This document shows, one piece after another, positions 10,758-60,712 of a stretch of 64,000 bases of DNA. The notes beneath the pieces were generated by a model. It ran no database searches. It saw only the letters and a program-made list of their open reading frames with translations, and was not told where the DNA came from. Each line of letters starts with the position of its first letter. Positions within the stretch are counted from its first letter, which is position 1. Both the position numbers and the translations under genes were made by a program. Location of the stretch: IMG/VR virus record IMGVR_UViG_3300021959_006017, positions 1-64,000 of that record. One strand, 5' to 3'.

Positions 10758-11345
10758 ATGGAAGATCCAAGAGATGAATATCGTATATTACCAAATCTTT
10801 TACCTAAATCCTATGCAGATCTTTTAGAAGCTGAACTTTCTAAAATACATTGGTATTGGTATCCAAGTGCTTCAGGAGATGTTGCTGTAGATCCCGATGA
10901 CAAAAATATTTTTGATTCTCCCCAAATGCAACATGTTTTTATTGAAGAAAATGAACCAATATCTCCGTATGCTTCTCTAATACAACCAGTAGTTTGGTTT
11001 TTAGAAAAAGAAATGCAAATGAGTATTAAAAATATTGTACGTGTAAAAGCAAATCTTTTAATGCCAGGTAGATCAAACTTAGATAACTATAATATTCCTC
11101 ATGTTGATTCTCCAAGCGACGATTATATTAGCATGGTTTATTATGTAAACAATGCAGACGGTGATACTAAAATATTTCACAAAACACTTGACGAAGGACA
11201 CAAAGACTTATATACTATAGCAGGCATTAGTCCTAAGAAAGGAAGAGCTGTAATGTTTAAATCAAATAGATTTCATGCAAGCACACCCCCGTTTAAAGCT
11301 GATAAAAGAATAGTATTAAACTTTGTATTACAACCAGGAACATAA
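10758..11345 (+). CDS. 2OG-Fe(II) oxygenase
   Basis: PHVD (HxD), SMVYYVNNADGDT, FHAS..P...KRIVLNF (distal His and Arg). Confidence 0.8.
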   Translation: MEDPRDEYRILPNLLPKSYADLLEAELSKIHWYWYPSASGDVAVDPDDKNIFDSPQMQHVFIEENEPISPYASLIQPVVWFLEKEMQMSIKNIVRVKANLLMPGRSNLDNYNIPHVDSPSDDYISMVYYVNNADGDTKIFHKTLDEGHKDLYTIAGISPKKGRAVMFKSNRFHASTPPFKADKRIVLNFVLQPGT

Positions 11346-11347
11346 AA

Positions 11348-12391
11348 ATGACAGATAGAGCAAAAGCCTTTTTTATTAATGGAGGTGCAGGCAGGGTGCT
11401 TGCTAGTATTCCAGCATTAGAAAAGTATTATGAAGAAACTAGCCAAGACTTTATTATTGTAGCAGAAGGCGGAATGGACCTCTATAAAGGTCATCCAATA
11501 CTACATGAACGTGCATATGATGTTTGGCATAAAGGAATATTCCAAGACAAAATTAAAAATATGGATGTAGTAACTCCAGAACCATACAGAGTGTGGGAGT
11601 ACTACAATCAAAAATGTAACCTACAACAAGGTTTTGATATAGAAATAAACGGTAAAGGTATAAGAGATCTTCCAAGACCTTTTATACATTTAACACAAGA
11701 AGAAAAAGTAAATGGTAAAGCATGCATTAAAGAGGTATTAGATAATGTAGGTTTTAATAAAACTATCGTATTCCAACCATTTGGAAGAGGCATAGGAGAA
11801 CACGCAGGGTTTTTAACAGATCCAAGTGGAAGAAGTTTTGAATATGCAAATATAATAAGCATTGTGAAGAAGTTACAAGAAAAAGAGTTTGCAGTTATTT
11901 TAATGAGTGAACTAAACTTAGACTTCCAAAAAGAAGGAACGCCGAAACCTGTTGCACAGCCAAGTGGAATAGGTTTAAAGCAGTGGGCAGCTATTATTGC
12001 CGAAGCAGACTATTTCTTAGGCTGCGATAGTGTGGGACAACATATTGCACACAGTTTAAATAAACCTGCTACAGTAGTAACTGGTAGCACTTTTGCTGAA
12101 AATGTTAGTTTTTTAGATGATGAAAAGTTTGATATTCAAGACATGGGAGAAAGTAAAAGAAAATATGATCCTATTAGAATAGTACCAGACGAAGTTGTTG
12201 CAAAAAACAACGATGGTATAATGGCTATGAATGGTCCCATTGAAGACGAGATTATTAAAAACTTAATAAAAAACTTTGAAAAATATGTAAAAAAAGAAAC
12301 TACAGTAAAAAAGAAAGTTTCTGAACTTACTAACAAAACAAACAATACAGCACCTAAGCTGGTGCCTGGTTTATCACCTATTAAGGAATAA
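11348..12391 (+). CDS. GT-B glycosyltransferase, GT9 (heptosyltransferase)-like
   Basis: N-terminal GGAGRVLASIPAL and C-terminal WAAIIAEADYFLGCDSVGQHIAHSLNKPATVVTGST, matching the GT9 'L..AA.I..A..F.G.DSG..H.A.A...P...L.G.T' pattern. Confidence 0.65.
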   Translation: MTDRAKAFFINGGAGRVLASIPALEKYYEETSQDFIIVAEGGMDLYKGHPILHERAYDVWHKGIFQDKIKNMDVVTPEPYRVWEYYNQKCNLQQGFDIEINGKGIRDLPRPFIHLTQEEKVNGKACIKEVLDNVGFNKTIVFQPFGRGIGEHAGFLTDPSGRSFEYANIISIVKKLQEKEFAVILMSELNLDFQKEGTPKPVAQPSGIGLKQWAAIIAEADYFLGCDSVGQHIAHSLNKPATVVTGSTFAENVSFLDDEKFDIQDMGESKRKYDPIRIVPDEVVAKNNDGIMAMNGPIEDEIIKNLIKNFEKYVKKETTVKKKVSELTNKTNNTAPKLVPGLSPIKE

Positions 12392-12393
12392 AA

Positions 12394-14187
12394 ATGAGCG
12401 AAGAAAATAAAGACATTTGGATTGCAGGTATTACAAGAGGACATAATGGAGGTGTCTGTTTATTAAAAAACGGCGAAGTTATATTTGCTACTGAAGAAGA
12501 ACGTTATTCTCGGTACAAGTATGATGGCGGACCACTAGCTAGTATGCTTAAAATTAAAGAATATACAGATAAACTTGATTATATAGTTGTTGCTCACACG
12601 CAAAGTTTAAAAGATACAGCAGGTATTATTGATTTCTCAGGCGATGACATGTATACTGGTTGGGCAAGAAAGTTAGGCCTTATAGAAAGAAAGAATGTAG
12701 ATTTAAGAAATCACCCACAAGTAATGGATCTAAGCCACATGCATCATAGACTACATGCTGCTTGTGCTTTTTATAGATCTGGATTTGACGAAGCAGTAGC
12801 CGTTATTGTTGATGGCGCCGGTACTTTTATTCCAATGCAAATAAATGAGAATGAACATGCATACGGATTTGAAGTTGAAAGTTTATTCGACTGTTCTTAT
12901 CCTGCAAACTTTGCTACTTTATTTAAAAGTATAGGACTTAAAAATGGCGGAGTTCGTACTCAAATAGATAATGTAGAAACTTTTGGAGAAGAATACGAAA
13001 GCGTTATACATGATAGAGCAGGTATTGTTAAAGTGTATGAAGCTGTTACTGAGTTTTGTGGATTTCCTGCTATTGAAGCAGGTAAAACTATGGGACTATT
13101 TCCGTACGGTGAACCTAACGAAAATATTCCACCGTTGTTTGAAAAAGGCGGTCGTGTTAGATTAAGTAATAGAAATGTTATTATACCAACGTATCCTAAC
13201 TCTGCACTAGTAAACTTTCAACAATATGATGAACTAAAAGACGGTTTAGCAAGTGACTTAACTAAGTTACAAAATCGCAGAGATCTAGCATATGCTGTCC
13301 AGACACAATCACAAGATCAGGTTGTAGAATATATTCGTCAGGCTGTTGCAATGAGTGGTAAAAAGAATGTTGTTATTTCAGGCGGCTATGGATTAAACTG
13401 TGTTGCTAACTATCATTACTTAGAAGCACTCAAAGACGAAGATATTAACATATATGTAGAACCTGTTAGTAATGATGCAGGCACAGCTATAGGTGGTGCA
13501 CTAATGACATATTACCATTTGTCTGAAAGCACTGAAAATAAAGGTATTAACCATAACTTATATTTAGGTATTCCTTATACTTATGAAATAGACGAGATTG
13601 AATCATTAGCACAAGAATACGGAGCAACAGTAACAGATGCTACAAATGAAGATGTAGTTGATTTAATCACTAGTAAAAACATTGTAAGTGTATTCCAAGG
13701 AGGATCAGAATCAGGACCTAGAGCACTTGGTAACAGAAGTATACTTTATGATCCAACAGATCCAGATGGAAAAGATTTTGTTAATACTGTAAAACGCAGA
13801 GAATACTTCCGTCCGTTTGCTGGTAGTATCCTTGAAGAAGATGTACACGAATGGTTTGATTTACGTGGTATGGAAAGCTCACCTACAATGATGTATGCTG
13901 TAAACTGTCAGCCAGGCATTGAAGAAAAGATTCCTGCTATTATTCATGTAGACGGTACTTGTCGTATACAAACTGTTAATAGAGAACAAAATGCAAACTA
14001 TTATGATTTGATTAAAGCCTTTAAAGAAAAGACAGGCTGTCCGATTATCTTTAATACTAGCTTTAACTTAGGCGGTGAACCATTAGTAGAAACACTAGAA
14101 GATGCATTTTGGACACTACAGCAAAGTGATATTGAATACTGTTATCTTCCAGAATATGGTAAGTTGTTGTCAATCAAAAACGCATAA
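12394..14187 (+). CDS. O-carbamoyltransferase (NodU/CmcH/TobZ family)
   Basis: GHNGGVCL..EEERYSRYK, HHRLHA..AF..SGF, VDGAG, EAGKTMGL.PYG, GG..LNCVAN, DAGTAIG, ESGPRALGNRSIL, KRRE.FRPFA, HVDGTCRIQTV, NTSFNL.GEPLVET. Confidence 0.93.
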   Translation: MSEENKDIWIAGITRGHNGGVCLLKNGEVIFATEEERYSRYKYDGGPLASMLKIKEYTDKLDYIVVAHTQSLKDTAGIIDFSGDDMYTGWARKLGLIERKNVDLRNHPQVMDLSHMHHRLHAACAFYRSGFDEAVAVIVDGAGTFIPMQINENEHAYGFEVESLFDCSYPANFATLFKSIGLKNGGVRTQIDNVETFGEEYESVIHDRAGIVKVYEAVTEFCGFPAIEAGKTMGLFPYGEPNENIPPLFEKGGRVRLSNRNVIIPTYPNSALVNFQQYDELKDGLASDLTKLQNRRDLAYAVQTQSQDQVVEYIRQAVAMSGKKNVVISGGYGLNCVANYHYLEALKDEDINIYVEPVSNDAGTAIGGALMTYYHLSESTENKGINHNLYLGIPYTYEIDEIESLAQEYGATVTDATNEDVVDLITSKNIVSVFQGGSESGPRALGNRSILYDPTDPDGKDFVNTVKRREYFRPFAGSILEEDVHEWFDLRGMESSPTMMYAVNCQPGIEEKIPAIIHVDGTCRIQTVNREQNANYYDLIKAFKEKTGCPIIFNTSFNLGGEPLVETLEDAFWTLQQSDIEYCYLPEYGKLLSIKNA

Positions 14188-18500: not shown

Positions 18501-21360
18501 TGATTTAGAAATCGTAGTAGCAAGTGTTGACACAGGTGGTGAAATACTTACAGTAACAGAAAACTACGAAGCAGCAGTAACAGGAGAATCAGCAAACTTC
18601 ATTGCTACTGTAACAATGTCAGAGGCTACCACAGGTGATATACTTCCATTAGAAGAAATAACATTTAGTGCATTAGCTACATTAAATGTAACTTTTCCAA
18701 ATAATCACGGACTTGTACCTGGAGATACATTTATTACAACAGTTACATCAGATGATGGTGCTAACAATCATAACCTAGCAGCTGGTTCATTCATTGCAAC
18801 GGATATTCCAACAGATGATTCTCTTACATTCCAAGCAAGAGCAGCAGGAAATATAGATGCTGCTACAATAAAATTAGACGGAGTAGTATATCCAAGACCA
18901 GATGCATTCTTTACACATAGACCATATGATGGAGGTGTACAGCTTGGTACAGGCGGTCCACAACACGGTTCGCAAGCAATACGTCAAAGTAAAAACTATA
19001 TTCGTTACCAGTCTGGTAAAGGTATTATGTATACAACTGGTGCGCTATTTGCACCAAGTTATGATTTGCGTAGTGTAACATCAGACGGAGTAGAAGTAGG
19101 ATCAACTATTACTATAGTTACAGACGATAATGACCACGGTGTACAAGCTGGCGGCGTTATTAGATTGATTGGCGTTGAAACTGAAGGTTACAATAGCGGT
19201 ACAGAAAGCTATCACGAACCGAAGTTTGATTATACAGTTACTAGAGTAGTTGACGAAAGAACTTTTGAAGTTGAAGCACAGCGTAGACTAGGAGCAACAA
19301 GTGCAGTACTAGGATTTGCAGCACAAATGAGTGTCGTTAGTTGGCATGGTGCTACAGTACGTTCTGGTATTTTTGACGATCAAAACGGAATTTTTTGGGA
19401 ATACGACGGAACACAACTAAGCGTAGTACAGCGTACTGGTACAAAACAAGTAGCAGGTACTATTGCTATGACTGTAGACGATAGCCAAGTAAGAGGTACA
19501 AATACAAGATTTAGAGATCAGCTAAAAGCCGGCGATAGGATCATCATCAAAGGTATGACACATGTTATTTCTAACATTGTTGATCAAGATACAATGTATG
19601 TAACTCCGGATTTTAGAGGCGTAGTTGATATTAGTGGTGCAAAAGCGATGCTAATCACTGACAAAAAAGTAAAACAAAGTGAGTTTAACTTAGATAGCCT
19701 AGATGGTACAGGACCGAGCAACTACAACTTTGATCATGCTAAAATGCAAATGATCGGTATTCAATACTCATGGTATGGTGCTGGTTTCATTGACTTTATG
19801 GTACGTGGTTCAGATGGTAATTTTGTGTTTGCACATAGAATGCGTAACTCAAACGTAAACACTGAAGCATTTATGCGTTCAGGTAACTTACCTGTACGTT
19901 ATGAAGTTTCTAATGAAGGTCCTCCAGGTAAACTTGTGGCAGATATAGATGCAACCCAAACAAGTCTTGTTTTAGAAGATTCAAGTTTCTTCCCAACTAC
20001 AGGTACTTTATACATCGACAACGAAGTTATTAGATTTACAGGAAATAATAAGACAACAAACACACTTACTGGGCTTACAAGAGGAAGTACTCTTACAAAC
20101 TTCCAAGCAGGCGCAACAAGAGCTTATGCAGCAGGAAATGCAGCATCACATAGTAATAAAACTGGTGTTATACTAATATCACAAACTATTACTCCACTTA
20201 TATCACACTGGGGTAGTGCGTTTATTACAGACGGCGGATTTGACGAAGACCGCGGTTACATTTTCTCTTACACTGAATCTAGTGTTCCTGTTACTACAAC
20301 TAAACAGACAGCATTTTTGATTCGACTAGCACCTAGTGTTTCTAACGCTATTATTGGAGATTTAGGAGAACGAGAACTCCTAAACCGTGCCCAGTTACTA
20401 TTACAAGGTATTGAGTGTACTTCGGATACAGGAACCGGCGGTATTGTTATTGAAGGTGTGTTAAATCCAAAGAACTATCCAACAAACCCAGCAAATATTG
20501 GTTGGCAGACACTAAGTACAGAAGCCCAAGGTGGACAACCTAGCTTTGCTCAAGTTGCAGCAGGTGGTTCTGTAACTTGGTCAACAGGCGCAGCAGCAAC
20601 AACTGCATCGGCAACAGCTATTGCAACTCTATCAGTGACAATGCCAACAAACGAAAACAACGGCAAAAACGATGAAATTGATTTTGATGCTATTGACTAT
20701 GAAACTTCAGGGCCAGTTGTACGGGGTGCTATTGTTAGTTCAACTAACTCAAGTGGAGATACTGTTTATGATGCAGCCGACGGTGTTACTGTACAAAGTA
20801 TTCAGTATAGACAAAATGACAACGACTACAGAATAACAGTGTCGGCTGACCCTGATGATAGATATGATGATGACTTTACATTTACATTTGGTGGTAACTT
20901 ATCTAACAGAAACTTTGTTTATTTAACAAAAACTACTTTTGACAGTACTAACGCTACTATTGGTACAGGAGTTACACAAACAGGCGGAAGTGTTAACTTC
21001 CCAGCTGGAACATTGATATCTCAGATTATACCTTTAAACCACGGCGGCACAGAGTTCTACGAAGTTAGATTTAACAACAGTTTCTCAGGTACATTTGCAG
21101 CAGGTTCAGGAACAATCGAGTTTGAGTTTGTTGAACCACCTTATGCACAGCCAGGTGAAACTGTATTTTCGTTTATTGCTAACCCAGGAGAACGCTCAGT
21201 TCTTAGTTTAAATCAACTAAAAGAACTTACAAATACTACACTAGGTGGTAGAGGTACATTTCCGAATGGTCCGGATGTGCTTGCTATCAACGTGTATAAG
21301 GTTACTGGCACATCAATTGATGCAAATATTATTCTAAGATGGGGTGAAGCTCAGGCTTAA
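15547..21360 (+). CDS. Very large virion structural protein (1937 aa)
   Basis: Thr/Gly-rich; KCERDIG...DLRYGGN module shared with the 1613-aa protein; five internal ~90-aa repeats; blocks DADFEYGLQPTKW and IRQSKNYIRYQSGKG. Confidence 0.7.
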   Translation: MAKRKIDNYVFSPGMSYKDNLVPNAYSLIDSNTNYIIAEAISWIQQEIDADNAPFIGYTYNQSKCERDIGFILSSYKNDLRYGGNEKTRLYAQKYWEGSVSQLDGDRQPEVVTHTYIKNLINNYILTNTAFTSLSDETQVIDTTKTAEASASTTITTLSTFLVDVIENGLGQLPTLDPNTFGYVKMQGKYNLSDILLITNNTTNDVIFNFTNNDTGAVIEVKDAQTVDNSQDVDFPKYLQTTDGVTTLKLNASTASQSADDDLQIFVEYTENGKSLTVTRPYDFGTDAIERMRVAPALSMLDADFEYGLQPTKWSAIGMMRGYPSIYEVPGSELNVSSVTTDASAGTGGVGQSLVTVNTVSPHGFTPGKPITIKALENSVAGASRAEGSFVIVETPSTRSFRYYAKAKVGTTSGEVLSTTYTQLRAAGFYTGSNISSNPVFTVESNGFSGTMVAELTVPTGETRIPYDGNTPELGAPLVHAGGNIPTGSQVTQSITQSSGGGTYLTAGIAQDISNGSNTFTVTDATGIITDLAIDRGDGVAAFITNIIGEDITISDNFTRDISGTTVTYSGVSAAPETGVGFNAKFDVSWTGGTYTVAVGAGINDAGEAYEVGDKIRILGSDVGGFSPDNDIIITVDGIFSLGSINALTATGTAFDGTGNLPGEQPPVEGGLGFGSIFDVTYTDNTYGSVTIDTSGESYTANDVIVIDGNNFLGGSSGTNDATVKVTTVDGSGGITAATVTGTAPNASVNYGVDNVDITYVYSGTTGSGAEFTVTRNGTVYSASIDVAGSNYLPTETFTIDGANLGGVTTTNDCIITVDNVGGSGEISAVSVSGTAANTDTKLAVSGTNLSGTGAIFTIDIAAGVYSVTIDDGGFDYATNQTFVIEGTSLGGTTPTNDATITVSTVDASGTITGATIAGTAITDTGSVTSVGGTNELPEGDGATFDVVRSASAYSVTVIDQGTLYTNGNRMIITGDLLGGQSPLHDLEIVVASVDTGGEILTVTENYEAAVTGESANFIATVTMSEATTGDILPLEEITFSALATLNVTFPNNHGLVPGDTFITTVTSDDGANNHNLAAGSFIATDIPTDDSLTFQARAAGNIDAATIKLDGVVYPRPDAFFTHRPYDGGVQLGTGGPQHGSQAIRQSKNYIRYQSGKGIMYTTGALFAPSYDLRSVTSDGVEVGSTITIVTDDNDHGVQAGGVIRLIGVETEGYNSGTESYHEPKFDYTVTRVVDERTFEVEAQRRLGATSAVLGFAAQMSVVSWHGATVRSGIFDDQNGIFWEYDGTQLSVVQRTGTKQVAGTIAMTVDDSQVRGTNTRFRDQLKAGDRIIIKGMTHVISNIVDQDTMYVTPDFRGVVDISGAKAMLITDKKVKQSEFNLDSLDGTGPSNYNFDHAKMQMIGIQYSWYGAGFIDFMVRGSDGNFVFAHRMRNSNVNTEAFMRSGNLPVRYEVSNEGPPGKLVADIDATQTSLVLEDSSFFPTTGTLYIDNEVIRFTGNNKTTNTLTGLTRGSTLTNFQAGATRAYAAGNAASHSNKTGVILISQTITPLISHWGSAFITDGGFDEDRGYIFSYTESSVPVTTTKQTAFLIRLAPSVSNAIIGDLGERELLNRAQLLLQGIECTSDTGTGGIVIEGVLNPKNYPTNPANIGWQTLSTEAQGGQPSFAQVAAGGSVTWSTGAAATTASATAIATLSVTMPTNENNGKNDEIDFDAIDYETSGPVVRGAIVSSTNSSGDTVYDAADGVTVQSIQYRQNDNDYRITVSADPDDRYDDDFTFTFGGNLSNRNFVYLTKTTFDSTNATIGTGVTQTGGSVNFPAGTLISQIIPLNHGGTEFYEVRFNNSFSGTFAAGSGTIEFEFVEPPYAQPGETVFSFIANPGERSVLSLNQLKELTNTTLGGRGTFPNGPDVLAINVYKVTGTSIDANIILRWGEAQA
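17280..18560 (+). repeat. Five degenerate ~90-aa repeats in the 1937-aa CDS
   Basis: Consensus G.GA.F.V....Y.V.I...G..Y....I.I.G..LGG..P.ND..ITV..V...G.I....GTA; boundaries approximate. Confidence 0.75.
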
Positions 21361-28002: not shown

Positions 28003-28007
28003 ATACA

Positions 28008-28027: not shown

Positions 28028-28046
28028 CAATACGGAGAACTTCTAT

Positions 28047-46721: not shown

Positions 46722-46747
46722 ATAAATATTTAACTGGAGCGAAGCAA

Positions 46748-51417: not shown

Positions 51418-52258
51418 CTTACATACAAAGTTTGGTGCCCTCAATAGTGGCCCTGTTTTTGATGCCTTTCGTACTGGCGCTAATGCTCTCGGGCATAGTG
51501 TTGTTGTTGACGGTAATGACGGCATTGATGTTATTTGGAGCGTACTTTGGAACGGTCGCATGTCTGGAAACCGTGCTATTTGGGAAAGAAACATTTCACA
51601 ATCCAAACCGACCATCGTCCTCGAAGTCGGAGGAATATCTCGAGGATCCACTTGGAAGGTAGGATTAAATGGAATTAATAGAGATGCTTTTTTCGGTGAT
51701 GGCGGGAACGATAGTAGGCGTAGCGATCTACTTAATCTTAGATTGAAACCGTGGCGCACTGAAGGCAAATACATTCTTATATGTGGACAGCATGATAAGA
51801 GTTTACAATGGCAAGACATGCCTAGAATGAGTCAATGGGTAATGGATACTATTGATGAAATAAAAAAGCATACCGATCGTACAATAATATTTCGACCACA
51901 TCCTAGATGCACCCTACCTCATATCGAACACGAATATACTAATGTTAAAAGACAAAACCCTCGCTATATTAATGGCACTTATGACGATTTTGACATGGGC
52001 TTTGATAACATATGGGCTACTGTAAGTTATAGCTCAAACCCAGGTATACACAGTATACTCGAAGGCGTACCTGCTTTTGTAAGTCCGCACAGTCTTGCAT
52101 ACGATGCAGCAAATGATATAGACTTCCTTCACGATATAGAAAACCCAATAAGACCTGATAGACAGCAATGGCTAAACGACTATGCATGGACAGAGTTTAC
52201 TGTAGAAGAAATAGCCTCAGGATTACCACTTAAACACTTGACATCTAAGCTAGTTTAA
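51407..52258 (+). CDS. Capsule-synthesis (KpsC/KpsS-like) glycosyltransferase 4
   Basis: LKPWR...YILICGQHDKS, TDRTIIFRPHP, ATVSYSSNPGIHSILEGVPAF. Confidence 0.6.
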   Translation: MQFNLHTKFGALNSGPVFDAFRTGANALGHSVVVDGNDGIDVIWSVLWNGRMSGNRAIWERNISQSKPTIVLEVGGISRGSTWKVGLNGINRDAFFGDGGNDSRRSDLLNLRLKPWRTEGKYILICGQHDKSLQWQDMPRMSQWVMDTIDEIKKHTDRTIIFRPHPRCTLPHIEHEYTNVKRQNPRYINGTYDDFDMGFDNIWATVSYSSNPGIHSILEGVPAFVSPHSLAYDAANDIDFLHDIENPIRPDRQQWLNDYAWTEFTVEEIASGLPLKHLTSKLV

Positions 52259-52266
52259 GTTATAAT
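52238..52266 (+). promoter_or_regulatory. Sigma70 consensus promoter TTGACA-N17-TATAAT
   Basis: Perfect consensus, 6 nt before ATG 52273. Confidence 0.8.
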
Positions 52267-55438: not shown

Positions 55439-55807
55439 ATGACAATGAAAGCAGGAAAGATATGGGGACAAACTGAACTAATACACGCTAATGGTGTATT
55501 AGAGTTTCACCGTATAGAGTTTAAAAAAGGATATAAATGTAGCGAGCATGAGCATCGTTATAAATGGAATGGATTCTTTGTTGAATCGGGCAAGATGATT
55601 GTTCGCGTTTGGCAAGATGCAGATCAAGAAGGGTTAGTTGATGAAACTATTCTTGAAGCTGGAGACTTCACACAGGTGAAGCCAGGAAAAATTCACCAGT
55701 TTGAAGGTTTAGAAGATGGTGTCGCTTTTGAACTTTACTGGGCTGAATTTAATCACGATGACATTGTTCGTCGTACAATAGGCACAGAAGTAAAAGGAAA
55801 AAAATAA
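55439..55807 (+). CDS. Cupin-domain protein
   Basis: GKIWG.T, CSEH.H..KWNGF.VESG, V.PG..HQF. Confidence 0.75.
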   Translation: MTMKAGKIWGQTELIHANGVLEFHRIEFKKGYKCSEHEHRYKWNGFFVESGKMIVRVWQDADQEGLVDETILEAGDFTQVKPGKIHQFEGLEDGVAFELYWAEFNHDDIVRRTIGTEVKGKK

Positions 55808-56506: not shown

Positions 56507-56763
56507 TGGGTGAGCTTCTACCAGGAGAAGCATTGATATACGAGCGTAGCAATGGAGTTGTCTACGCTCGTTATCGCGACAAGCCAGAAATAGAACGATG
56601 GGTAATAGGAGGAGATCCAGGTGCAGTGGCTAGAGCACAAGGTCGATTATGCGACTATAGTGAATGGCAAAAACTGTGTGATATGTGTGTAGAACATCCT
56701 ACGCTAATGAAACTTATGGACCAACTTGTAACAACATATTATATTATGAAGGACGACAAATGA
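56506..56763 (+). CDS. Hypothetical protein
   Basis: 85 aa, coupled to both neighbours. Confidence 0.55.
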   Translation: MGELLPGEALIYERSNGVVYARYRDKPEIERWVIGGDPGAVARAQGRLCDYSEWQKLCDMCVEHPTLMKLMDQLVTTYYIMKDDK

Positions 56764-57086
56764 AATATGAACAATGGGATATAGGAGGAGAAGTTGTAAA
56801 AGCAGACGATCGCTATGTTGTAAAAGACAATACACTTCTTAACAACTTAATAGTAAGTAGTACAAACTTAAAACCCGGGAAATCAACAACAGGCCACAAG
56901 CATGAAGGTCAAGAAGAAGTATACATTTTTGTAAAAGGCCATGGAGTAATGCAGATAGACGATGAACGATTTGATGTAAATGAAGGCGATACAGTCTTAA
57001 TACAAGACGGAGTCTTTCATCGTGTGTATGCAGGTACAACAGGTTGTTATTTTATTTGTGTATTTGACGGAAGGAGAACCCATTGA
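56760..57086 (+). CDS. Cupin-domain protein
   Basis: L.PG.ST.GH.H.GQEEVY.F..G.G.M.ID...V..GD.V.I..G.FH.V. Confidence 0.8.
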   Translation: MKYEQWDIGGEVVKADDRYVVKDNTLLNNLIVSSTNLKPGKSTTGHKHEGQEEVYIFVKGHGVMQIDDERFDVNEGDTVLIQDGVFHRVYAGTTGCYFICVFDGRRTH

Positions 57087-57856
57087 GAATTATTGCAGGA
57101 CCGTGCCAACATGAAAGTTTAGAAAAAAGTTTAGAAATCGCAAAAGAATGTAAACGAGTTTGTCACAAACTCGGCATTGAATATTATTTTAAAGCAAGCT
57201 ATGATAAAGCCAATCGCACAAACATAAAGGGCGAAAGAGGTAAAGGTATTGGTTGCTTAGAAGATTTTAAAACTTTAAAAGAAGAAATACCTGGTCTTAA
57301 AACATTAACAGATGTACATGACAGTATGCAAGTTAATGTTATTCAATATCATTATAACGACTGTGTTGATGTACTACAGATACCTGCCTTTCTTTGTCGT
57401 CAAACAGATTTGATTAAAACAGCAGTTGATACAGGCAAGATAGTTAATATTAAAAAAGGACAGTTCTTAGCACCTTGGGACGTAGCAGGTATCCTTTCAA
57501 AAACAGAAGGTGCTAAAGAAGTATGGATTACTGAAAGGGGAACTAGCTTTGGATATAATACTTTGGTCGTTGATTTCACTGGCATGCAGTATATGCTTGA
57601 TACCTATAATGTTCCTATTGTTTTTGATGTTACCCACTCGGTTCAACGCCCGGGAGGAAATGGCAGTAGTAGCGGCGGCAATAGGGGGTATGTCCCTGGC
57701 CTATCTCGCGCTGCATCTGCAATGGGTATAACAGACTTCTTCTTAGAAGTACACGCTGACCCGGATAATGCACCCAGTGACGGTGCTAATATGTTACGCT
57801 TAGAAGATTTTGAAAGGACAGTAGATGACATCCACCGCTATTCTTATACCGGCTAG
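57083..57856 (+). CDS. kdsA: KDO-8-phosphate synthase
   Basis: IAGPC..ES, FKASYDKANRT, TDVH, LQIPAFLCRQTDL, NIKKGQFLAP, TERGTSFGY..LVVD, FDVTHSVQ.PGG.G..SGG.R, F.EVH..P..APSDG; TTG start after AAGGAG. Confidence 0.95.
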   Translation: MRIIAGPCQHESLEKSLEIAKECKRVCHKLGIEYYFKASYDKANRTNIKGERGKGIGCLEDFKTLKEEIPGLKTLTDVHDSMQVNVIQYHYNDCVDVLQIPAFLCRQTDLIKTAVDTGKIVNIKKGQFLAPWDVAGILSKTEGAKEVWITERGTSFGYNTLVVDFTGMQYMLDTYNVPIVFDVTHSVQRPGGNGSSSGGNRGYVPGLSRAASAMGITDFFLEVHADPDNAPSDGANMLRLEDFERTVDDIHRYSYTG

Positions 57857-58517
57857 ATATGCAAGCACACGCCTGCATGGAAAGCCTATGCTTGAGTTAG
57901 ATGGCATACCTATGATAAAGCGTGTGTATGACGCTTGTATAGCGTCTAACCTGCCAACATTTGTGCTTACTGACCACCAAGACATATACAACTATATGGG
58001 TGCCGGCAAGTGCATTATGGACACAGCAGATTATGAAAACGGCACAGAAAGATGTGCAGGTGCAGTAGCAAGCCGTGTGTTTGATGACTTTGATCAGTTT
58101 ATAAATGTACAAGGTGATATGCCAGATGTAACAGTTAACATGATTCATAAGTGCATAGTTAGTCTTAATCAATACGAAGTAAGTACAGTGTACACCGAAA
58201 TGCCTGAAGAAGAACAAAACAAGCCAAGTAGTGTAAAGATGGTTAGAGCAGGAGATCAGGCTCTGTGGTTTGGTAGAGGTATGACAGGCTACGGTGATTG
58301 GCACTTAGGTGTTTACGGTTATCGCAAGACTGCACTACAAGCATATCCGCATCTACGTATAGAACAAGAAGAACGTGTAGAAAAACTTGAACAGTTGCGT
58401 TGGCTAAAAAGTGGTTGGCAAATAGGTTGTTTGAGTGTATACTTTAATGGTGTAGAGATTAATACTGAACACGATGTTAACTTATGGAAGTACAAGCATG
58501 CCAAACAAGCACATTGA
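57825..58517 (+). CDS. kdsB: CMP-KDO synthetase
   Basis: IPARYASTRL.GKP, GTERC, INVQGD.P, H.GVYGYR, E..EKLEQLR.L. Confidence 0.92.
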   Translation: MTSTAILIPARYASTRLHGKPMLELDGIPMIKRVYDACIASNLPTFVLTDHQDIYNYMGAGKCIMDTADYENGTERCAGAVASRVFDDFDQFINVQGDMPDVTVNMIHKCIVSLNQYEVSTVYTEMPEEEQNKPSSVKMVRAGDQALWFGRGMTGYGDWHLGVYGYRKTALQAYPHLRIEQEERVEKLEQLRWLKSGWQIGCLSVYFNGVEINTEHDVNLWKYKHAKQAH

Positions 58518-58962: not shown

Positions 58963-59638
58963 TAAGCCATATGTATGTGAATACTGCGGTAGTGGTTATG
59001 TAAGAGAAAAAACTCTTGCTGCTCATATGTGTGAACCAAAGCGTAGAGCATTACAAAAAGATGAGAAACGTGTAAGGCACGGGTTTTATGCATTTCAGAG
59101 GTTCTACAAACTGAGTGCAGGCACAAAGAAGGAAAAAACATATGAAGACTTTTGTAAATCACAGTACTATAATGCTTTCGTCAAGTTTGGTTCGTTTATC
59201 AATAATGTGCGTCCTTTATATCCTGAGCGTTATATTGATCATGTCGTTACTAGTGGAGTAAAGCTCGATCACTGGTGCAAAGAAGAAATGTACGAAAAAT
59301 ATGCACTTGAACTTATTCTTAAAGAAGACGTAACAACTGCTTTAGAAAGAAGTGTAAAAAACATGATGGAATGGGCAGATGAAAATAATAGTGTATGGAA
59401 TCATTATTTCTTCTATGTAAGTTTGAACAGAGCTGTATGGCATATTAAAGACGGAAAAGTAAGTCCTTGGCTCATACTTAACTGCAAGAGCGGAAAAGAG
59501 ATGCTAAGTAAATTTAACGATGAACAACTAGAACTTGTGTATCATGTGATTAATCCAGAGCATTGGGCAATGCGATTTAATCGTAATCCAAGTGATGTTG
59601 CACTTGTTCGTGATATTGTAAAGGAAAGCAATCTATGA
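58937..59638 (+). CDS. Hypothetical protein with N-terminal zinc finger
   Basis: YVCEYCG..Y.RE.TL.AH.C. Confidence 0.6.
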   Translation: MASKTSNSDKPYVCEYCGSGYVREKTLAAHMCEPKRRALQKDEKRVRHGFYAFQRFYKLSAGTKKEKTYEDFCKSQYYNAFVKFGSFINNVRPLYPERYIDHVVTSGVKLDHWCKEEMYEKYALELILKEDVTTALERSVKNMMEWADENNSVWNHYFFYVSLNRAVWHIKDGKVSPWLILNCKSGKEMLSKFNDEQLELVYHVINPEHWAMRFNRNPSDVALVRDIVKESNL

Positions 59639-60087
59639 AAATATTGATTATGGGCCTGCCAGGCGCAGGTAAAACTTGGCTGGCTGAAAGACTACAAAAA
59701 CATTTGCCTGATTGTGCATGGTTTAATGCAGACGAAGTTCGCAAGATGGCAAATGACTGGGAGTTTAGTGAAGACGCAAGAATAAGACAGTCTCGTCGTA
59801 TGCGTAACTTAGCAGATTACGAAAAGGGGTGCGGGCGTAATGTTATTTGCGACTTTGTTTGTCCAACTGAACTTACACGCCATATCTTTGAAGCAGATAT
59901 TACTGTTTGGGTTGACACTATTAAAGAAGGAAGATTTGAAGATACTAATAAAATGTTTGAAGAACCTAAAACTGTTGATTTTAGAATAGATAAACATCTA
60001 AGCGAAGACGACGGCGAAGTAGAAAATCTAGCAAGTGCTATTCAAGCATTAAGAATATATGACGACGGAACTATTACAGGTTGTTAA
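59635..60087 (+). CDS. cysC: Adenylyl-sulfate (APS) kinase-like protein
   Basis: MGLPGAGKT P-loop, NADEVR, FS...R.RQ..R, VICDFVCP, FEEP...D. Confidence 0.7.
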   Translation: MKILIMGLPGAGKTWLAERLQKHLPDCAWFNADEVRKMANDWEFSEDARIRQSRRMRNLADYEKGCGRNVICDFVCPTELTRHIFEADITVWVDTIKEGRFEDTNKMFEEPKTVDFRIDKHLSEDDGEVENLASAIQALRIYDDGTITGC

Positions 60088-60302
60088 TGGAAGAAAAAGT
60101 ATCAGCAAAGCGCCATTTAGCAAAAGCAGTTACATGGCGTATTATAGCAAGTATTACCACAGCACTTATTGCTTGGACGTTCGGATTGCCTCCAAAGGCT
60201 GTCGGAGCAGTATTCATAGCAGACTTAATCATTAAGTTTGTTTTGTATTATGCTCACGAACGTATGTGGTACAAACATATTAAATATGGAGTTAAAGAAT
60301 GA
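60087..60302 (+). CDS. DUF2061-like small membrane protein
   Basis: R.LAKAVTWR..AS..T, K..LYY.HER.W....G. Confidence 0.75.
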   Translation: MEEKVSAKRHLAKAVTWRIIASITTALIAWTFGLPPKAVGAVFIADLIIKFVLYYAHERMWYKHIKYGVKE

Positions 60303-60712
60303 GTTTTGATTGGAAAAAGCCTACAACACAAATGTTAGGCAGATGGCAGCCGTGGCATGATGGTCATACTGCACTATTTAAAAAAGCATATGCAGAAACC
60401 GGCCAAGTTGCTATTATGATAAGAAATGTCGGAGGTATTATTGGAGAAGATGCTGGCGGCGGCCGTACAGTAAAACAAGACGACAATCCTTTTGATCTAA
60501 GCACAGTTACTAAAAATATTATTGCAGGATTAAAAGAACACGGCTTTAAACACGACGAAGATTATGTAATCATTGTTGTACCGAATATTGTAGATATTAG
60601 TTATGGACGAGGTGTTGGATATACCTTCACAGAACACGACTTAGGCAAAGACATACATGATATCAGTGCAACTAAGATTAGAGCAAAACTAAGGGAAGAA
60701 GGTAACCTATAA
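60299..60712 (+). CDS. HxGH nucleotidyltransferase (cytidylyltransferase-like)
   Basis: GRWQPWHDGH, NPF, I.YGR.VGY, ISATKIR. Confidence 0.75.
   Translation: MSFDWKKPTTQMLGRWQPWHDGHTALFKKAYAETGQVAIMIRNVGGIIGEDAGGGRTVKQDDNPFDLSTVTKNIIAGLKEHGFKHDEDYVIIVVPNIVDISYGRGVGYTFTEHDLGKDIHDISATKIRAKLREEGNL

What the first reader, a model, noticed from the sequence alone, without database searches (positions are those of the whole stretch)
10758..60712. Distributed phage toolkit for LPS-core-type glycans: ADP-heptose + CMP-Kdo donors, matching transferases and tailoring enzymes
Seen: hldE/gmhB/hldD (21.4-25.0 kb), kdsA/kdsB (57.1-58.5 kb), a GT9-like transferase (11.3 kb), four KpsC/KpsS-like and three GT-A-like transferases (44.6-52.3 kb), plus carbamoyl-, sulfo- and methyl-transferases and two 2OG-Fe(II) oxygenases. 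Established: HldE/GmhB/HldD make ADP-L,D-heptose, which GT9 enzymes use; KdsA/KdsB lead to CMP-Kdo, which KpsC/KpsS (GT107) enzymes use. Inference: donors and transferases pair up although they sit in separate loci, so this looks like one system in which the phage builds its own heptose/Kdo glycan, either decorating the virion (host-surface mimicry or shielding) or remodelling the infected cell's LPS/capsule (superinfection exclusion). Several transferases lie behind late-type TAAATA motifs and inside the tail region, favouring a virion acceptor. I cannot confirm novelty without a literature and database search.
Basis: partly seen in the sequence, partly recalled or inferred. Interest (0 to 1): 0.85.

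Follow-up and report, generated by a model that had tools for sequence, protein, structure and literature searches.

The report
Phage-encoded heptose and Kdo glycan modules
An uncultured marine jumbo phage carries genes to make two bacterial-type activated sugars (ADP-heptose and CMP-Kdo) and enzymes whose folds fit transferases for those sugars, but these form two separable modules rather than one system, and the heptose module has sat unexplained in cyanophage genomes since 2005.

Summary
The gene calls hold. HldE, GmhB-like, HldD-like, KdsA, KdsB, a NodU-type carbamoyltransferase, a sulfotransferase (minus strand) and a GT8 protein are all found by profile searches. The "GT9-like" protein and the four "KpsC-like" paralogs have no significant Pfam match. 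High-confidence structure models nevertheless match solved GT9 heptosyltransferases (WaaC, WaaF, TibC) and retaining beta-Kdo transferases (KpsC, WbbB, KrkA) as top hits. The Kdo-transferase motifs QXXXD and (K/R)XHP are canonical in one paralog, variant in two and lost in one. The GT9-like family keeps the donor motif but has an invariant Arg where WaaC has its catalytic Asp.

"One system" is not supported. Module A (heptose genes, GT9-like, carbamoyltransferase) is one locus in the tail-fibre region. It is orthologous to PSSM2_307-313 of cyanophage P-SSM2 and occurs widely without any Kdo genes. Module B (Kdo-transferase-like and GT-A genes, sulfotransferase, kdsAB) lies between uvsX and uvsW.

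Donor operons follow sigma-70-type promoters. Transferase operons follow the late motif ATAAATA that also precedes tail genes. The acceptor is unknown; virion (tail-fibre) glycosylation is slightly favoured over host-envelope remodelling.

The parts
10745..10752 (+). Late-type promoter motif TATAAATA, 5 nt before the start of the 2OG oxygenase / GT9-like / carbamoyltransferase operon
   Evidence: ATAAATA lies within 50 nt upstream of a same-strand start in 13 of 19 occurrences, against 0.49 expected (P 5e-17). The other sites precede tail fibre, tube and baseplate genes.
10758..11345 (+). 2OG-Fe(II) oxygenase (prolyl/lysyl-hydroxylase-type family PF13640)
   Evidence: 31.9 bits, above the cutoff of 27. 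A homolog sits next to the GT9-like gene in only 7/42 related loci.
11348..12391 (+). GT9-fold glycosyltransferase, a putative heptosyltransferase. The DSxxxH donor motif is kept (D227...H232). Arg16 is invariant where WaaC has its catalytic Asp13.
   Evidence: PF01075 E 2e-3. (TIGR02201 E 6e-5). (phrog_8954 E 1e-143, annotated as unknown function). (hhalign against WaaC/F/Q/U, probability 85%, C-terminal part only). (pLDDT 83). (3tov E 1.7e-10, TM 0.62; also WaaF, WaaC, TibC). (motifs).
12394..14187 (+). NodU/CmcH-type O-carbamoyltransferase, the constant partner of the GT9-like gene
   Evidence: Carbam_trans_C E 8e-58 and Carbam_trans_N E 2e-28. It is adjacent to the GT9-like gene in 42/42 loci and in P-SSM2 (PSSM2_308).
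21357..22022 (-). GmhB-like HAD-IIIA phosphatase. The true start is probably about 40 codons downstream of the TTG.
   Evidence: NF006506 E 2e-36, 125 bits against a cutoff of 178, match from residue 42. Also.
21949..22356 (-). Cupin, the constant partner of the HldD-like epimerase. It is the ortholog of PSSM2_312. Its role is unknown; a further epimerisation of the heptose is possible.
   Evidence: 44% identity to PSSM2_312; cupin and epimerase co-occur in 26/26 loci, and the cupin co-occurs with a GmhA-like gene in 24, so it does not replace GmhA there; only generic metal-cupin matches.
22346..23164 (-). HldD-like ADP-heptose 6-epimerase (SDR)
   Evidence: TIGR02197 E 1e-67, 228 bits against a cutoff of 275; 39% identity to E. 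coli HldD, with Y..xK and RYFNVYG kept.
23139..23714 (-). DUF6445 protein lying between hldD and hldE.
   Evidence: PF20043 E 8e-14.
23704..24960 (-). HldE, the bifunctional heptose-7-P kinase / heptose-1-P adenylyltransferase
   Evidence: NF008454 E 7e-104. Domain I scores 231 bits and domain II 161 bits, both covered end to end but below the equivalog cutoffs.
24966..24994 (-). Sigma-70-type promoter TTGACT-17-TATAAT, directly upstream of hldE
   Evidence: 11 of 12 consensus positions.
44595..45227 (+). GT-A-like (GT8-like) candidate with a DAD motif
   Evidence: nearest viral clusters are GT8 or nucleotide-diphospho-sugar transferases, and viral fusions of this domain with Capsule_synth exist; sequence. 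There is no Pfam hit, so this is a lead only.
45224..46165 (+). Retaining beta-Kdo-transferase-like GT with canonical motifs Q138-R-P-G-D142 and R177-M-H-P180
   Evidence: pLDDT 94. (KpsC 6mgb E 5.7e-8; the top 22 hits are all KpsC, WbbB or KrkA). (motifs aligned to KpsC and WbbB).. Motif definitions are from PMC12887879.
46137..46721 (-). Carbohydrate sulfotransferase (Sulfotransfer_2)
   Evidence: PF03567 E 3.7e-9, 37.5 bits, above the cutoff of 22.
46748..47311 (+). Methyltransferase-like protein (weak match), behind TATAAATA at 46721-46728
   Evidence: Methyltransf_23 at 23 bits, below the cutoff of 27..
47400..48173 (+). Fusion of a cytidylyl/adenylyl-transferase-like domain with a PMI-type cupin, behind ATAAATA at 47388. 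It is a conserved neighbour of the Kdo-transferase-like genes. Its substrate is unknown.
   Evidence: rfaE_dom_II E 1e-20; TagD E 3e-15. (ethanolamine-P cytidylyltransferase E 6e-17). (same fusion next to family members in L165, L167 and L169).
48173..48847 (+). GT8-family glycosyltransferase
   Evidence: PF01501 at 27.6 bits, above the cutoff of 24.3; phrog_28018.
48840..49646 (+). Degenerate paralog of the Kdo-transferase-like family. It lacks the Gln of QXXXD and lacks HP (K-V instead), so it is probably not catalytic.
49643..50578 (+). Kdo-transferase-like paralog. It has (K/R)XHP, but the acidic residue is at Q+2 (Q-R-D).
50545..51417 (+). GT-A-like candidate
   Evidence: nearest viral clusters are named nucleotide-diphospho-sugar transferase or GT8. 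GT2 at E 0.086 only. This is a lead only.
51407..52258 (+). Kdo-transferase-like paralog. It has (K/R)XHP, with Q-H-D.
52238..52266 (+). Perfect sigma-70-type promoter TTGACA-17-TATAAT at the head of the + strand run 52273...uvsW...cupins...kdsA-kdsB
   Evidence: 12 of 12 consensus positions.
55439..55807 (+). Cupin, a paralog (35%) of the heptose-module cupin. It is conserved upstream of kdsA in relatives at a median 88% identity.
   Evidence: present in 45/61 loci.
56685..57086 (+). PMI-like cupin immediately upstream of kdsA
   Evidence: The cupin-kdsA-kdsB triad recurs in an unrelated context in L048 and L056; generic cupin matches only.
57083..57856 (+). KdsA, Kdo-8-phosphate synthase
   Evidence: DAHP_synth_1 E 1e-50. 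(NF003543 at 319 bits, above the cutoff of 242).
57825..58517 (+). KdsB, CMP-Kdo synthetase
   Evidence: CTP_transf_3 E 6e-25. (NF003952 E 1e-47, 162 bits against a cutoff of 193; all top hits are KdsB models).
59635..60087 (+). APS-kinase-like P-loop kinase, a possible PAPS supply for the sulfotransferase (weak match)
   Evidence: PF01583 at 31 bits, above the cutoff of 21. (well below the equivalog cutoffs).

Best explanation
The window is the first 64 kb of a marine T4-like jumbo phage contig. It holds two separable glycan-building modules that work in the infected cell's cytoplasm.

Module A (heptose):
- An operon behind a sigma-70-type promoter encodes HldE, DUF6445, an HldD-like epimerase, a cupin and a GmhB-like phosphatase. 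It makes ADP-heptose, possibly tailored further by the cupin/SDR pair.
- A late-promoter operon in the tail-fibre gene block encodes a 2OG oxygenase, a GT9-fold transferase and an O-carbamoyltransferase. It transfers the heptose and carbamoylates it.

Module B (Kdo):
- KdsA and KdsB, with adjacent cupins, lie in a run headed by a sigma-70-type promoter. They raise the CMP-Kdo supply. The steps not encoded here (A5P isomerase, Kdo8P phosphatase) are left to the host or to genes outside the window.
- An island lies between uvsX and uvsW. It has three apparently competent and one degenerate retaining-beta-Kdo-transferase-like enzymes, interleaved with three GT-A (GT8-like) enzymes. It also has a sulfotransferase, a methyltransferase-like protein and a nucleotidyltransferase-cupin fusion. 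Part of it follows late motifs. It would assemble an acidic, decorated glycan containing Kdo and hexose.

Shown: the family and fold assignments, the motif states, the gene order, and synteny and co-occurrence in relatives.

Inferred: the donors actually used, expression timing from promoter motifs, and the acceptor. My preferred acceptor for module A is virion protein (tail fibres or neighbouring structural proteins). For module B it is open, either virion or host envelope.
For: Donor enzymes.

GT9 fold:
- The top 28 PDB hits are all GT9. They include TibC, which heptosylates a protein.
- The donor motif DSxxxH and (R)-S-F align to WaaC D261...H266 and K192-x-W.

Kdo-transferase fold and motifs:
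- The top 22 PDB hits are all KpsC, WbbB or KrkA.
- QXXXD and (K/R)XHP align. PMC12887879 names these as the conserved elements of GT99/107/140.
- Family member P0226 passes the Capsule_synth gathering score, and P0258 is fused to GT25.
- Viral fusions of GT8-like domains with Capsule_synth exist.
- Tetraselmis virus 1 and Caulobacter phage proteins share the fold.

Module A is one unit:
- GT9-like and carbamoyltransferase are adjacent in 42/42 loci, always among tail-fibre genes.
- The nucleotidyltransferase, cupin and epimerase lie within 10 kb in 19/42. This is a lower bound, because the window's own distance is 11 kb.
- The genes are contiguous in P-SSM2 as PSSM2_307-313.

Module B synteny holds in 27/39 kdsA loci with enough flank.

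Timing:
- ATAAATA occurs 13 of 19 times within 50 nt upstream of a start, P 5e-17. It precedes tail genes and also the genes at 10758, 46748 and 47400.
- Near-perfect sigma-70 promoters precede hldE and the gene at 52273.

Acceptor:
- Cyanobacterial LPS lacks heptose and Kdo (PMC4515613 abstract). Yet cyanophages carry module A, so at least there it is not topping up a host LPS-core pathway.
- No flippase, ligase or export gene was found in the window.
Against: - No biochemical data exist for any of these proteins.
- The GT9-like family has Arg in place of the WaaC catalytic Asp, so it may use a different acceptor chemistry or may not be a heptosyltransferase.
- Two Kdo-transferase-like paralogs have QxD rather than QXXXD.
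- Relatives of that family sit near a CTP_transf_3 gene together with a GT29 sialyltransferase (L164), or with no kdsAB in view (L167). The donor could therefore be another CMP-ulosonic acid, or CMP-Kdo supplied by the host.
- The nucleotidyltransferase-cupin fusion is a more constant neighbour than kdsAB and could make the real donor.
- Synteny within one phage lineage is shared descent, not independent evidence.
- Promoter motifs are not expression data.
- The virion acceptor rests on gene position and on the TibC precedent only.
- The host is unknown. The closest cultured relatives of UvsW are jumbo phages of Alpha- and Gammaproteobacteria at 50-55% identity.
Confidence: 0.55

Rival explanations
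1. Host-envelope remodelling. The same enzymes build or modify LPS, capsule or another envelope glycolipid of the infected cell. This would block superinfection, or stop progeny from adsorbing to debris and to cells that are already infected. This is the classic reading of cyanophage "LPS genes".
For: - KpsC, KpsS and WbbB act on lipid-linked acceptors at the membrane, and WaaC and WaaF act on Kdo2-lipid A. These are the closest solved relatives.
- The idea was proposed for P-SSM2 in 2005 (PMC1079782) and for S-SCSM2R in 2025 (PMC12801897).
- The donor operons have early-type promoters, which gives time for export.
- Module B is not in the structural gene block.
Against: - No flippase, ABC exporter, ligase or polymerase-export gene is in the window or in the related loci examined.
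- Module A is fixed inside the tail-fibre block in 42/42 loci, and the transferase operons follow late motifs.
- Cyanophage hosts have LPS without heptose or Kdo.
- The GT9-like family lacks the base used by LPS heptosyltransferases.
Confidence: 0.3
2. Unlinked auxiliary metabolic genes. hldE/gmhB/hldD and kdsAB merely sustain host LPS precursor pools during a long infection. The transferases use other donors (UDP-, CDP- or other CMP-sugars). On this view there is no dedicated heptose/Kdo glycan.
For: - kdsA occurs in other phage contexts without the transferase family. In L048 it sits among ClpP, PTPS, PMM and SOD, and the family is also absent from L007, L009, L014 and L062.
- A relative's GT island shows no kdsAB nearby.
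- The pathways are incomplete in the window: no GmhA, KdsD or KdsC.
Against: - The heptose genes are physically contiguous with the GT9-like gene in P-SSM2 and in at least 19/42 loci.
- The (K/R)XHP and QXXXD motifs point to a CMP-ulosonic acid donor, and kdsAB is the only such pathway seen in the window.
- Hosts lacking heptose in their LPS would not need the pool.
Confidence: 0.1
3. DNA hypermodification. Some of the glycosyltransferases between uvsX and uvsW glycosylate modified bases in phage DNA, as T4 glucosyltransferases and other viral GTs do.
For: - The island lies among replication and recombination genes: gp32, UvsX and UvsW.
- Viral GTs that hypermodify DNA are known. This is cited within PMC12619734.
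Against: - No base hydroxymethylase was identified in the window.
- The folds found (beta-Kdo transferase-like, GT8) have no known DNA-modifying members.
- A sulfotransferase and a carbamoyltransferase fit glycan tailoring better.
- Part of the island follows late motifs.
Confidence: 0.03

Closest known systems
"LPS gene clusters" of large T4-like cyanomyoviruses (P-SSM2 PSSM2_307-313; also S-SSM7, S-SM2, S-CAM1)
   Same: Module A is orthologous gene for gene. The matches are tail fibre, GT9-like (47% identity), carbamoyltransferase (47%), nucleotidyltransferase plus kinase (HldE as two genes), cupin (44%) and epimerase (41%). They lie in the same tail-fibre neighbourhood. The co-occurrence of these genes was noted in 2010 (PMC3037559).
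   Different: - HldE is fused here.
- A GmhB-like gene is present, and the GmhA-like gene (PSSM2_311) is absent.
- The module is split here by a 1937-aa virion gene.
- PSSM2_307 and phrog_8954 are annotated as hypothetical or of unknown function, and PSSM2_312 is annotated as a nucleotidyltransferase although it is a cupin.
- Those cyanophages show no match to the Kdo-transferase-like family, and no kdsA except in S-SCSM2R.
Retaining beta-Kdo glycosyltransferases KpsC/KpsS (GT107), WbbB (GT99) and KrkA (GT140)
   Same: They share the modified GT-B fold. QXXXD and (K/R)XHP align with KpsC and WbbB. They occur next to GT-A modules, as in dual-module capsule enzymes.
   Different: - None of the four window proteins matches Pfam Capsule_synth even at E 10.
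- They are single-module proteins of about 270-310 aa encoded by a phage.
- Two copies have QxD and one has lost both motifs.
- Acceptor and linkage are unknown.
GT9 heptosyltransferases WaaC/WaaF, and the protein O-heptosyltransferase TibC
   Same: They share the fold, the N-terminal G-x-V-x-x-[ST]-x-P-A-L segment and the C-terminal DSxxxH donor motif. The gene is linked to ADP-heptose synthesis genes.
   Different: - The catalytic Asp13 of WaaC is an invariant Arg here.
- The score is below the Pfam GT9 threshold (17.8 against 22).
- Profile-profile similarity is limited to the C-terminal domain.
- The family is always paired with an O-carbamoyltransferase and placed among tail-fibre genes.
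Synechococcus phage S-SCSM2R kdsA/kdsB, described as the first report in a cyanophage (PMC12801897)
   Same: An adjacent kdsA-kdsB pair in a large marine myovirus, lying beside glycosyltransferase-like genes. KdsA is 40% identical.
   Different: No member of the Kdo-transferase-like family lies within 10 kb there. The paper offers only a general host-surface reading and names no Kdo transferase.
Giant-virus glycan machineries: the predicted Kdo pathway of CroV and Fadolivirus, the four KpsC-like proteins of Tetraselmis virus 1, and glycosylated mycobacteriophage virions
   Same: In these cases a virus encodes both sugar activation and transferases. Virion glycans built by viral enzymes in the cytoplasm are established for chloroviruses and mimiviruses. 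Kdo pathways are predicted in CroV (PMC9614988). The TetV-1 proteins share the fold.
   Different: Those are eukaryotic viruses, or phages using other sugars. In those cases no heptose module and no pairing of Kdo synthesis with identified Kdo transferases has been shown.

Membership tests
GT9 (CAZy; Pfam PF01075 Glyco_transf_9) | Score at or above the Pfam gathering threshold | tested here: not met
   17.8 bits against 22, E 2e-3, residues 208-248 only. NCBIfam TIGR02201 gives E 6e-5, far below its cutoff.
GT9 (CAZy; Pfam PF01075 Glyco_transf_9) | GT-B fold closest to solved GT9 enzymes | tested here: met
   the top 28 PDB hits are all GT9 (3tov E 1.7e-10, TM 0.62; 1psw; 2gt1; 2h1h; 4rap). 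The model has pLDDT 83.
GT9 (CAZy; Pfam PF01075 Glyco_transf_9) | C-terminal ADP-heptose-binding motif D-[ST]-x-x-x-H | tested here: met
   D227-S-V-G-Q-H232 is invariant in the family and aligns to WaaC D261...H266.
GT9 (CAZy; Pfam PF01075 Glyco_transf_9) | N-terminal catalytic Asp (WaaC Asp13 in the G-D motif) | tested here: not met
   GRVLASIPAL here against GDVLHTLPAL in WaaC. Arg16 is invariant in 45 sequences. The role of Asp13 is from my recollection of the WaaC literature.
GT9 (CAZy; Pfam PF01075 Glyco_transf_9) | Uses ADP-heptose as donor | not testable with these tools
   Only genomic linkage to hldE- and hldD-like genes is available.
Retaining beta-Kdo transferases (GT99/GT107/GT140; Pfam PF05159 Capsule_synth for GT107) | Modified GT-B fold of KpsC, WbbB and KrkA | tested here: met
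   the top 22 PDB hits are all of this group (6mgb E 5.7e-8, TM 0.53). The model has pLDDT 94.
Retaining beta-Kdo transferases (GT99/GT107/GT140; Pfam PF05159 Capsule_synth for GT107) | QXXXD motif (Gln binds the Kdo carboxylate; Asp is the nucleophile) | tested here: inconclusive
   It is met in 45224-46165 (Q138RPGD142). The copies at 49643 and 51407 have Q-x-D. The copy at 48840 has neither Q nor D. The definition is from PMC12887879.
Retaining beta-Kdo transferases (GT99/GT107/GT140; Pfam PF05159 Capsule_synth for GT107) | (K/R)XHP CMP-binding motif | tested here: met
   R-M-H-P, R-F-H-P and R-P-H-P in three paralogs. It is lost (D-K-V) in 48840-49646. H and P are conserved at over 92% in 140 family members.
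Retaining beta-Kdo transferases (GT99/GT107/GT140; Pfam PF05159 Capsule_synth for GT107) | Sequence membership of PF05159 | tested here: not met
   None of the four paralogs matches even at E 10. The only link is transitive: family member P0226 scores 24 bits against a cutoff of 20. A profile of 140 members hits KpsC and WbbB at E 0.05-0.1.
Retaining beta-Kdo transferases (GT99/GT107/GT140; Pfam PF05159 Capsule_synth for GT107) | CMP-beta-Kdo donor with retention of configuration | not testable with these tools
   It is inferred from the motifs and from kdsAB in the same genome.
HldE (NF008454) | Equivalog cutoff and both domains present | tested here: inconclusive
   It is the top hit at E 7e-104 and both domains are covered end to end. 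The score is 348 bits against a cutoff of 521.
HldD (TIGR02197) | Equivalog cutoff and SDR catalytic Tyr/Lys | tested here: inconclusive
   228 bits against 274.6. Identity to E. coli HldD is 39% with YxxxK kept. About 24 residues are deleted in the N-terminal domain.
GmhB (NF006506) | Equivalog cutoff | tested here: inconclusive
   It is the top hit at E 2e-36, with 125 bits against a cutoff of 178.
KdsA (NF003543) | Equivalog cutoff | tested here: met
   319 bits, above the cutoff of 242.
KdsB (NF003952 / TIGR00466) | Curated cutoff | tested here: inconclusive
   162 bits against 193, E 1e-47. The five best models are all KdsB.
NodU/CmcH O-carbamoyltransferases (PF02543 + PF16861) | Both domains above the gathering score | tested here: met
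   100.7 and 195.3 bits.
Sulfotransfer_2 (PF03567) | Gathering score | tested here: met
   37.5 bits, above the cutoff of 22, for 46137-46721(-).
GT8 (PF01501) | Gathering score | tested here: met
   48173-48847 scores 27.6 bits, above the cutoff of 24.3. It is not met for 44595-45227 or 50545-51417.

The most novel reading that the evidence does not exclude
Abundant marine T4-like phages, cyanomyoviruses included, glycosylate their own tail fibres with carbamoyl-heptose. They do so with a GT9-derived protein heptosyltransferase that carries Arg in place of the catalytic Asp. This jumbo-phage lineage also coats virion proteins with a sulfated and methylated Kdo/hexose glycan. That glycan would be made by a previously unrecognised, phage-specific family of retaining beta-Kdo transferases, in effect a phage-built "capsule" or glycan shield. 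A side possibility concerns the paralogous cupins in the two modules, which may be new sugar-phosphate or nucleotide-sugar isomerases/epimerases. One example would be a non-SIS arabinose-5-phosphate isomerase next to kdsA.
Probability: 0.3. Interest if true: 0.85.

Novelty: new variant of a known kind. Interest (0 to 1): 0.6.

Why it matters
Phage "LPS genes" have been catalogued for twenty years without a mechanism. The 2010 comparison of cyanomyoviruses even asked whether they are stuffer DNA.

This work assigns folds to two hypothetical-protein families: a GT9-like protein with an altered active site, and a very large viral family of beta-Kdo-transferase-like enzymes (4,595 cluster representatives). 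It also shows which donor genes travel with them.

That turns the question into direct experiments: Kdo-adduct trapping, heptose transfer assays, and virion glycoproteomics on cultured cyanophages.

If virions are the acceptor, tail-fibre glycosylation would bear on host range, adsorption and particle stability for some of the most abundant viruses in the sea. If the host envelope is the acceptor, it would be a lytic-phage route to receptor masking using sugars that some hosts do not make.

Tried and rejected
- Pfam at E 10, PHROGs, and a four-sequence profile against PDB gave nothing usable for the four paralogs. The best hit was a CapG epimerase at E 0.15.
- A profile of GT9-like homologs against PDB sequences found nothing. 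hhalign against E. coli WaaC/F/Q/U aligned only the C-terminal domain.
I rebuilt the alignment without that row and did not send the sequence elsewhere.
- The search for related loci with the 140-sequence family alignment failed because it had no conserved stretch. Independent contexts were therefore sampled with five look-ups only, one of which was a 1.8-kb contig.
- I considered the heptose-module cupin as a substitute for GmhA and largely rejected it. In cyanophage-type loci the cupin co-occurs with a GmhA-like gene in 24 of 28 loci and always with the epimerase. PDB matches of the cupins are generic metal cupins.
- The exact T4 late promoter TATAAATA is not enriched overall, with 5 found against 8.5 expected. 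Only the shorter ATAAATA, judged by position, is informative.
- No sulfotransferase was found on the + strand or by a PSB-motif scan. It lies on the minus strand, and it overlaps the + strand ORF 46356-46733, which is spurious.
- Rfam found no RNA family in the window.
- A megablast of the structural region against cultured phages gave one weak hit. The host could not be assigned.
- The rest of the contig (236-343 kb) could not be read, so the absence of GmhA, KdsD and KdsC applies to the window only.

Full report
**What the window is**

Its genes are those of a T4-like myovirus:
- Tail fibres at 161-6463.
- A 1937-aa virion protein at 15547-21360.
- gp15, sheath and tube at 25430-35206.
- Terminase, gp32 and UvsX at 37997-43923.
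- UvsW at 53462-54925.

No cultured phage is close at the DNA level. The kdsA gene lies at the same coordinate in IMG/VR contig UViG_3300021959_006017, which is 236,751 bp long. Identical proteins also occur on a contig of 343,488 bp. This is therefore an uncultured marine jumbo phage. The closest cultured relatives of its UvsW are jumbo phages of Sinorhizobium, Agrobacterium, Pseudomonas and Vibrio, at 50-55% identity. Its tail-fibre and glycan genes are closest to cyanomyoviruses. The host is unknown.

**Checking the observation**

The donor-pathway calls are sound.
- HldE (23704-24960, minus strand) matches the bifunctional model at E 7e-104, with both domains covered.
- The SDR at 22346-23164 matches ADP-heptose 6-epimerase at E 1e-67. 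It is 39% identical to E. coli HldD.
- The HAD protein at 21357-22022 is best matched by GmhB.
- KdsA passes its equivalog cutoff.
- The five best models for KdsB are all KdsB models.

The tailoring and GT-A calls vary in strength.
- The carbamoyltransferase, one 2OG oxygenase, DUF6445 and a GT8 protein are clear.
- The sulfotransferase is real but lies on the minus strand at 46137-46721.
- The methyltransferase call is weak.
- Two of the three GT-A-like proteins rest only on language-model and structure leads.
- No GmhA, KdsD or KdsC equivalent was seen in the window.

**The four "KpsC/KpsS-like" proteins**

They are true paralogs of a very large family. The family has 4,595 representatives at 50% clustering, and the nearest atlas clusters are almost all viral. 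None of the four matches any Pfam or PHROG model, even at E 10.

The structural and motif evidence is as follows.
- An AlphaFold model of 45224-46165 built on 140 family members has pLDDT 94.
- Its 22 best PDB matches are all retaining beta-Kdo transferases: KpsC (GT107), WbbB (GT99) and KrkA (GT140). Epimerases and TagF come only after these.
- A family profile aligns its Q-x-x-x-D, R-x-H-P and N-S...E segments onto the same segments of KpsC and WbbB.
- The KrkA paper names QXXXD (Asp nucleophile; Gln binds the Kdo carboxylate) and (K/R)XHP (CMP binding) as the conserved core of these enzymes.

The state of the four copies:
- 45224-46165 is canonical (QRPGD, RMHP).
- 49643-50578 and 51407-52258 keep R-x-H-P but have the acidic residue two positions after the Gln.
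- 48840-49646 has lost the Gln and the HP, so it is probably not catalytic.

Further links to glycan synthesis:
- One family member passes the Capsule_synth threshold, and another is fused to GT25.
- Viral fusions of GT8-like domains with Capsule_synth exist.
- Tetraselmis virus 1 carries four proteins of this fold.

**The GT9-like protein**

Sequence support is thin. Pfam gives E 2e-3, and hhalign against E. coli WaaC/F/Q/U gives 85% probability over the C-terminal domain only.

The structural support is stronger. The model (pLDDT 83) has GT9 structures as its 28 best PDB matches. These include WaaC, WaaF and TibC, the enzyme that O-heptosylates an autotransporter protein.

The donor motif D-S-x-x-x-H is invariant. 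The N-terminal segment GRVLASIPAL parallels WaaC's GDVLHTLPAL, but with an invariant Arg where WaaC has Asp13. I recall Asp13 as WaaC's catalytic base, which is recollection and was not tested here. It is thus a GT9-derived enzyme with an altered acceptor side.

**One system or two**

The heptose genes form one conserved module.
- In P-SSM2 the orthologs are contiguous between tail-fibre genes. The order is PSSM2_307 (GT9-like), 308 (carbamoyltransferase), 309 and 310 (HldE as two genes), 311 (annotated phosphoheptose isomerase), 312 (the cupin, annotated as a nucleotidyltransferase) and 313 (epimerase).
- Across IMG/VR, the GT9-like gene and the carbamoyltransferase are adjacent in 42 of 42 loci with at least 9 kb on both sides. 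They always lie among tail-fibre genes.
- The nucleotidyltransferase, cupin and epimerase lie within 10 kb in 19 of the 42. This is a lower bound, because in the window itself a 5.8-kb virion gene pushes hldE 11 kb away.
- None of the 42 has kdsA, kdsB or a Kdo-transferase-like gene nearby.

Module B sits elsewhere, between uvsX and uvsW and downstream of uvsW.
- Its order is kept in 27 of 39 kdsA loci with enough flank. These belong to the same lineage, so this is shared descent.
- In other contexts kdsA (with kdsB, and sometimes with the upstream cupin) occurs without the transferase family.
- One relative's GT island shows no kdsAB nearby.
- Another family member sits in an island with three sulfotransferases, methyltransferases, a CTP_transf_3 gene and a GT29 sialyltransferase.

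The pairing of a CMP-ulosonic acid donor with these transferases is chemically well founded. Still, CMP-Kdo may often come from the host, and some family members may use other CMP-sugars. A nucleotidyltransferase-cupin fusion (47400-48173) is a more constant neighbour than kdsAB, and its product is unknown.

**Expression signals**

ATAAATA occurs 19 times in the window. Thirteen of these lie within 50 nt upstream of a same-strand start, against 0.49 expected (P 5e-17).
- Ten of the thirteen precede tail-fibre, tube and other genes in the structural gene blocks.
- The other three precede the 2OG/GT9-like/carbamoyltransferase operon, the methyltransferase, and the fusion gene that heads the GT8/Kdo-transferase run.

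By contrast, hldE follows TTGACT-17-TATAAT. The run that contains uvsW and kdsAB follows a perfect TTGACA-17-TATAAT. The inference is that donors are made early and transferases are made with the virion parts. These are motif matches only.

**Mechanism and acceptor**

I commit to two cytoplasmic glycan-building modules. Module A transfers heptose and carbamoylates it. The heptose may be further epimerised by the SDR/cupin pair. From memory, such pairs tailor heptoses in Campylobacter capsule synthesis. Module B builds a Kdo/hexose glycan that is sulfated and methylated. The interleaved order GT-A, Kdo-T, ..., GT8, Kdo-T*, Kdo-T, GT-A, Kdo-T (* marks the degenerate copy) suggests alternating additions.

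For module A I favour virion proteins as acceptor, for these reasons:
- Its position in the tail-fibre block is fixed.
- It follows the late motif.
- TibC is a precedent for a GT9 enzyme acting on a protein.
- No export genes were found.
- Cyanophage hosts have LPS without heptose or Kdo (PMC4515613).

Host-envelope remodelling is the explanation proposed in 2005 and again in 2025. It remains a strong rival, especially for module B, whose closest solved relatives act on lipid-linked acceptors.

**Novelty**

Already known:
- "LPS" clusters in large cyanomyoviruses and the co-occurrence of the heptose genes.
- Heptose genes annotated in other cyanophages.
- kdsAB in S-SCSM2R.
- Predicted Kdo pathways in giant viruses.

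My searches of the held library found no report of the following:
- Phage beta-Kdo-transferase-like enzymes.
- The GT9 nature and Asp-to-Arg change of the PSSM2_307 family.
- That family's fixed pairing with a carbamoyltransferase among tail-fibre genes.

The library lacks most subscription-journal papers, so this absence is provisional. I rate the finding as a new variant of a known kind.

Noticed in passing
window 29794-31956 and 31874-33145 (+): The tail sheath gene is split into two overlapping ORFs in different frames. They match phrog_10581 positions 2-557 and 547-913. A relative (L088:1284-4643) has a single 1119-aa ORF. The cause is a frameshift, which could be an assembly error, a pseudogene or a programmed shift.
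   Followed up: partly
window 21949-22356(-) and 55439-55807(+); also 56685-57086(+): Paralogous cupins (35% identity) sit in the heptose module next to the HldD-like gene and upstream of kdsA. The one near kdsA has a median 88% identity in relatives, higher than KdsA itself (73%). A third, PMI-like cupin abuts kdsA. The cupin-kdsA-kdsB triad recurs in an unrelated phage context (L048, L056). Their function is unknown. A sugar-phosphate isomerase or epimerase role is possible. Replacement of GmhA looks unlikely in the cyanophage-type loci.
   Followed up: partly
window 47400-48173 (+); L165:8179-8952, L167:7487-8254, L169:3828-4598: A fusion of a cytidylyltransferase-like domain (closest solved structure: ethanolamine-phosphate cytidylyltransferase) with a PMI-type cupin lies next to Kdo-transferase-like genes wherever I looked, usually followed by a GT8-like gene. 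It may make an unrecognised activated donor.
   Followed up: partly
L001:13364-13720 (P-SSM2 PSSM2_312): This gene is deposited as "putative nucleotidyltransferase". However, it is 44% identical to the window's cupin 21949-22356 and shows no nucleotidyltransferase match here, so the annotation is probably wrong.
   Followed up: partly
window 28802-28830, 52238-52266 and 62916-62943 (+); 24994-24966 (-): Three perfect (12/12) and one 11/12 sigma-70-type promoters each lie directly upstream of a gene start. This suggests host-RNA-polymerase early transcription units in this jumbo phage.
   Followed up: no
window 35577-36014 (+): A TnsA-like endonuclease domain protein (E 1e-22) sits between the tail-tube region and the terminase gene. 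It may be a homing-endonuclease-type insertion.
   Followed up: no
window 7162-8046, 8048-8953, 8963-9796 (+): Three tandem paralogs with a glycine-rich domain (PF21722) lie between the tail fibre genes and the GT9-like operon. They are conserved in the cyanophage-type loci (PSSM2_304 and 306) and are candidate glycosylation targets.
   Followed up: no
window 46356-46733 (+): This listed ORF translates to low-complexity hydrophobic sequence. It is overlapped by the real sulfotransferase gene on the opposite strand, so it is probably not a gene.
   Followed up: yes
L015, L045, L060, L067 and others, downstream of the homolog of window 62147-62914: Relatives carry a second, distant carbamoyltransferase homolog (27-32% identity to 12394-14187) a few kb past kdsAB. 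In this phage it would lie just beyond the end of the window.
   Followed up: no
window 55808-56506, 60714-61211, 63285-63770, 24987-25421: Other auxiliary genes are present: a Vut_1-family transporter-like protein, a peptide deformylase, a DUF6580 protein, and a NUDIX hydrolase next to gp15. The NUDIX gene is kept beside gp15 in relatives that lack hldE nearby, so it is probably unrelated to the heptose genes.
   Followed up: no
L164 (JGI 3300028840, 170-kb contig): This locus is a 20-kb glycan-tailoring island. It has three sulfotransferases, at least five methyltransferases, two asparagine-synthase-like genes, a pyruvyl transferase, a CTP_transf_3 gene, a GT29 sialyltransferase and a Kdo-transferase-family member. 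It is a much larger version of the window's module B.
   Followed up: no
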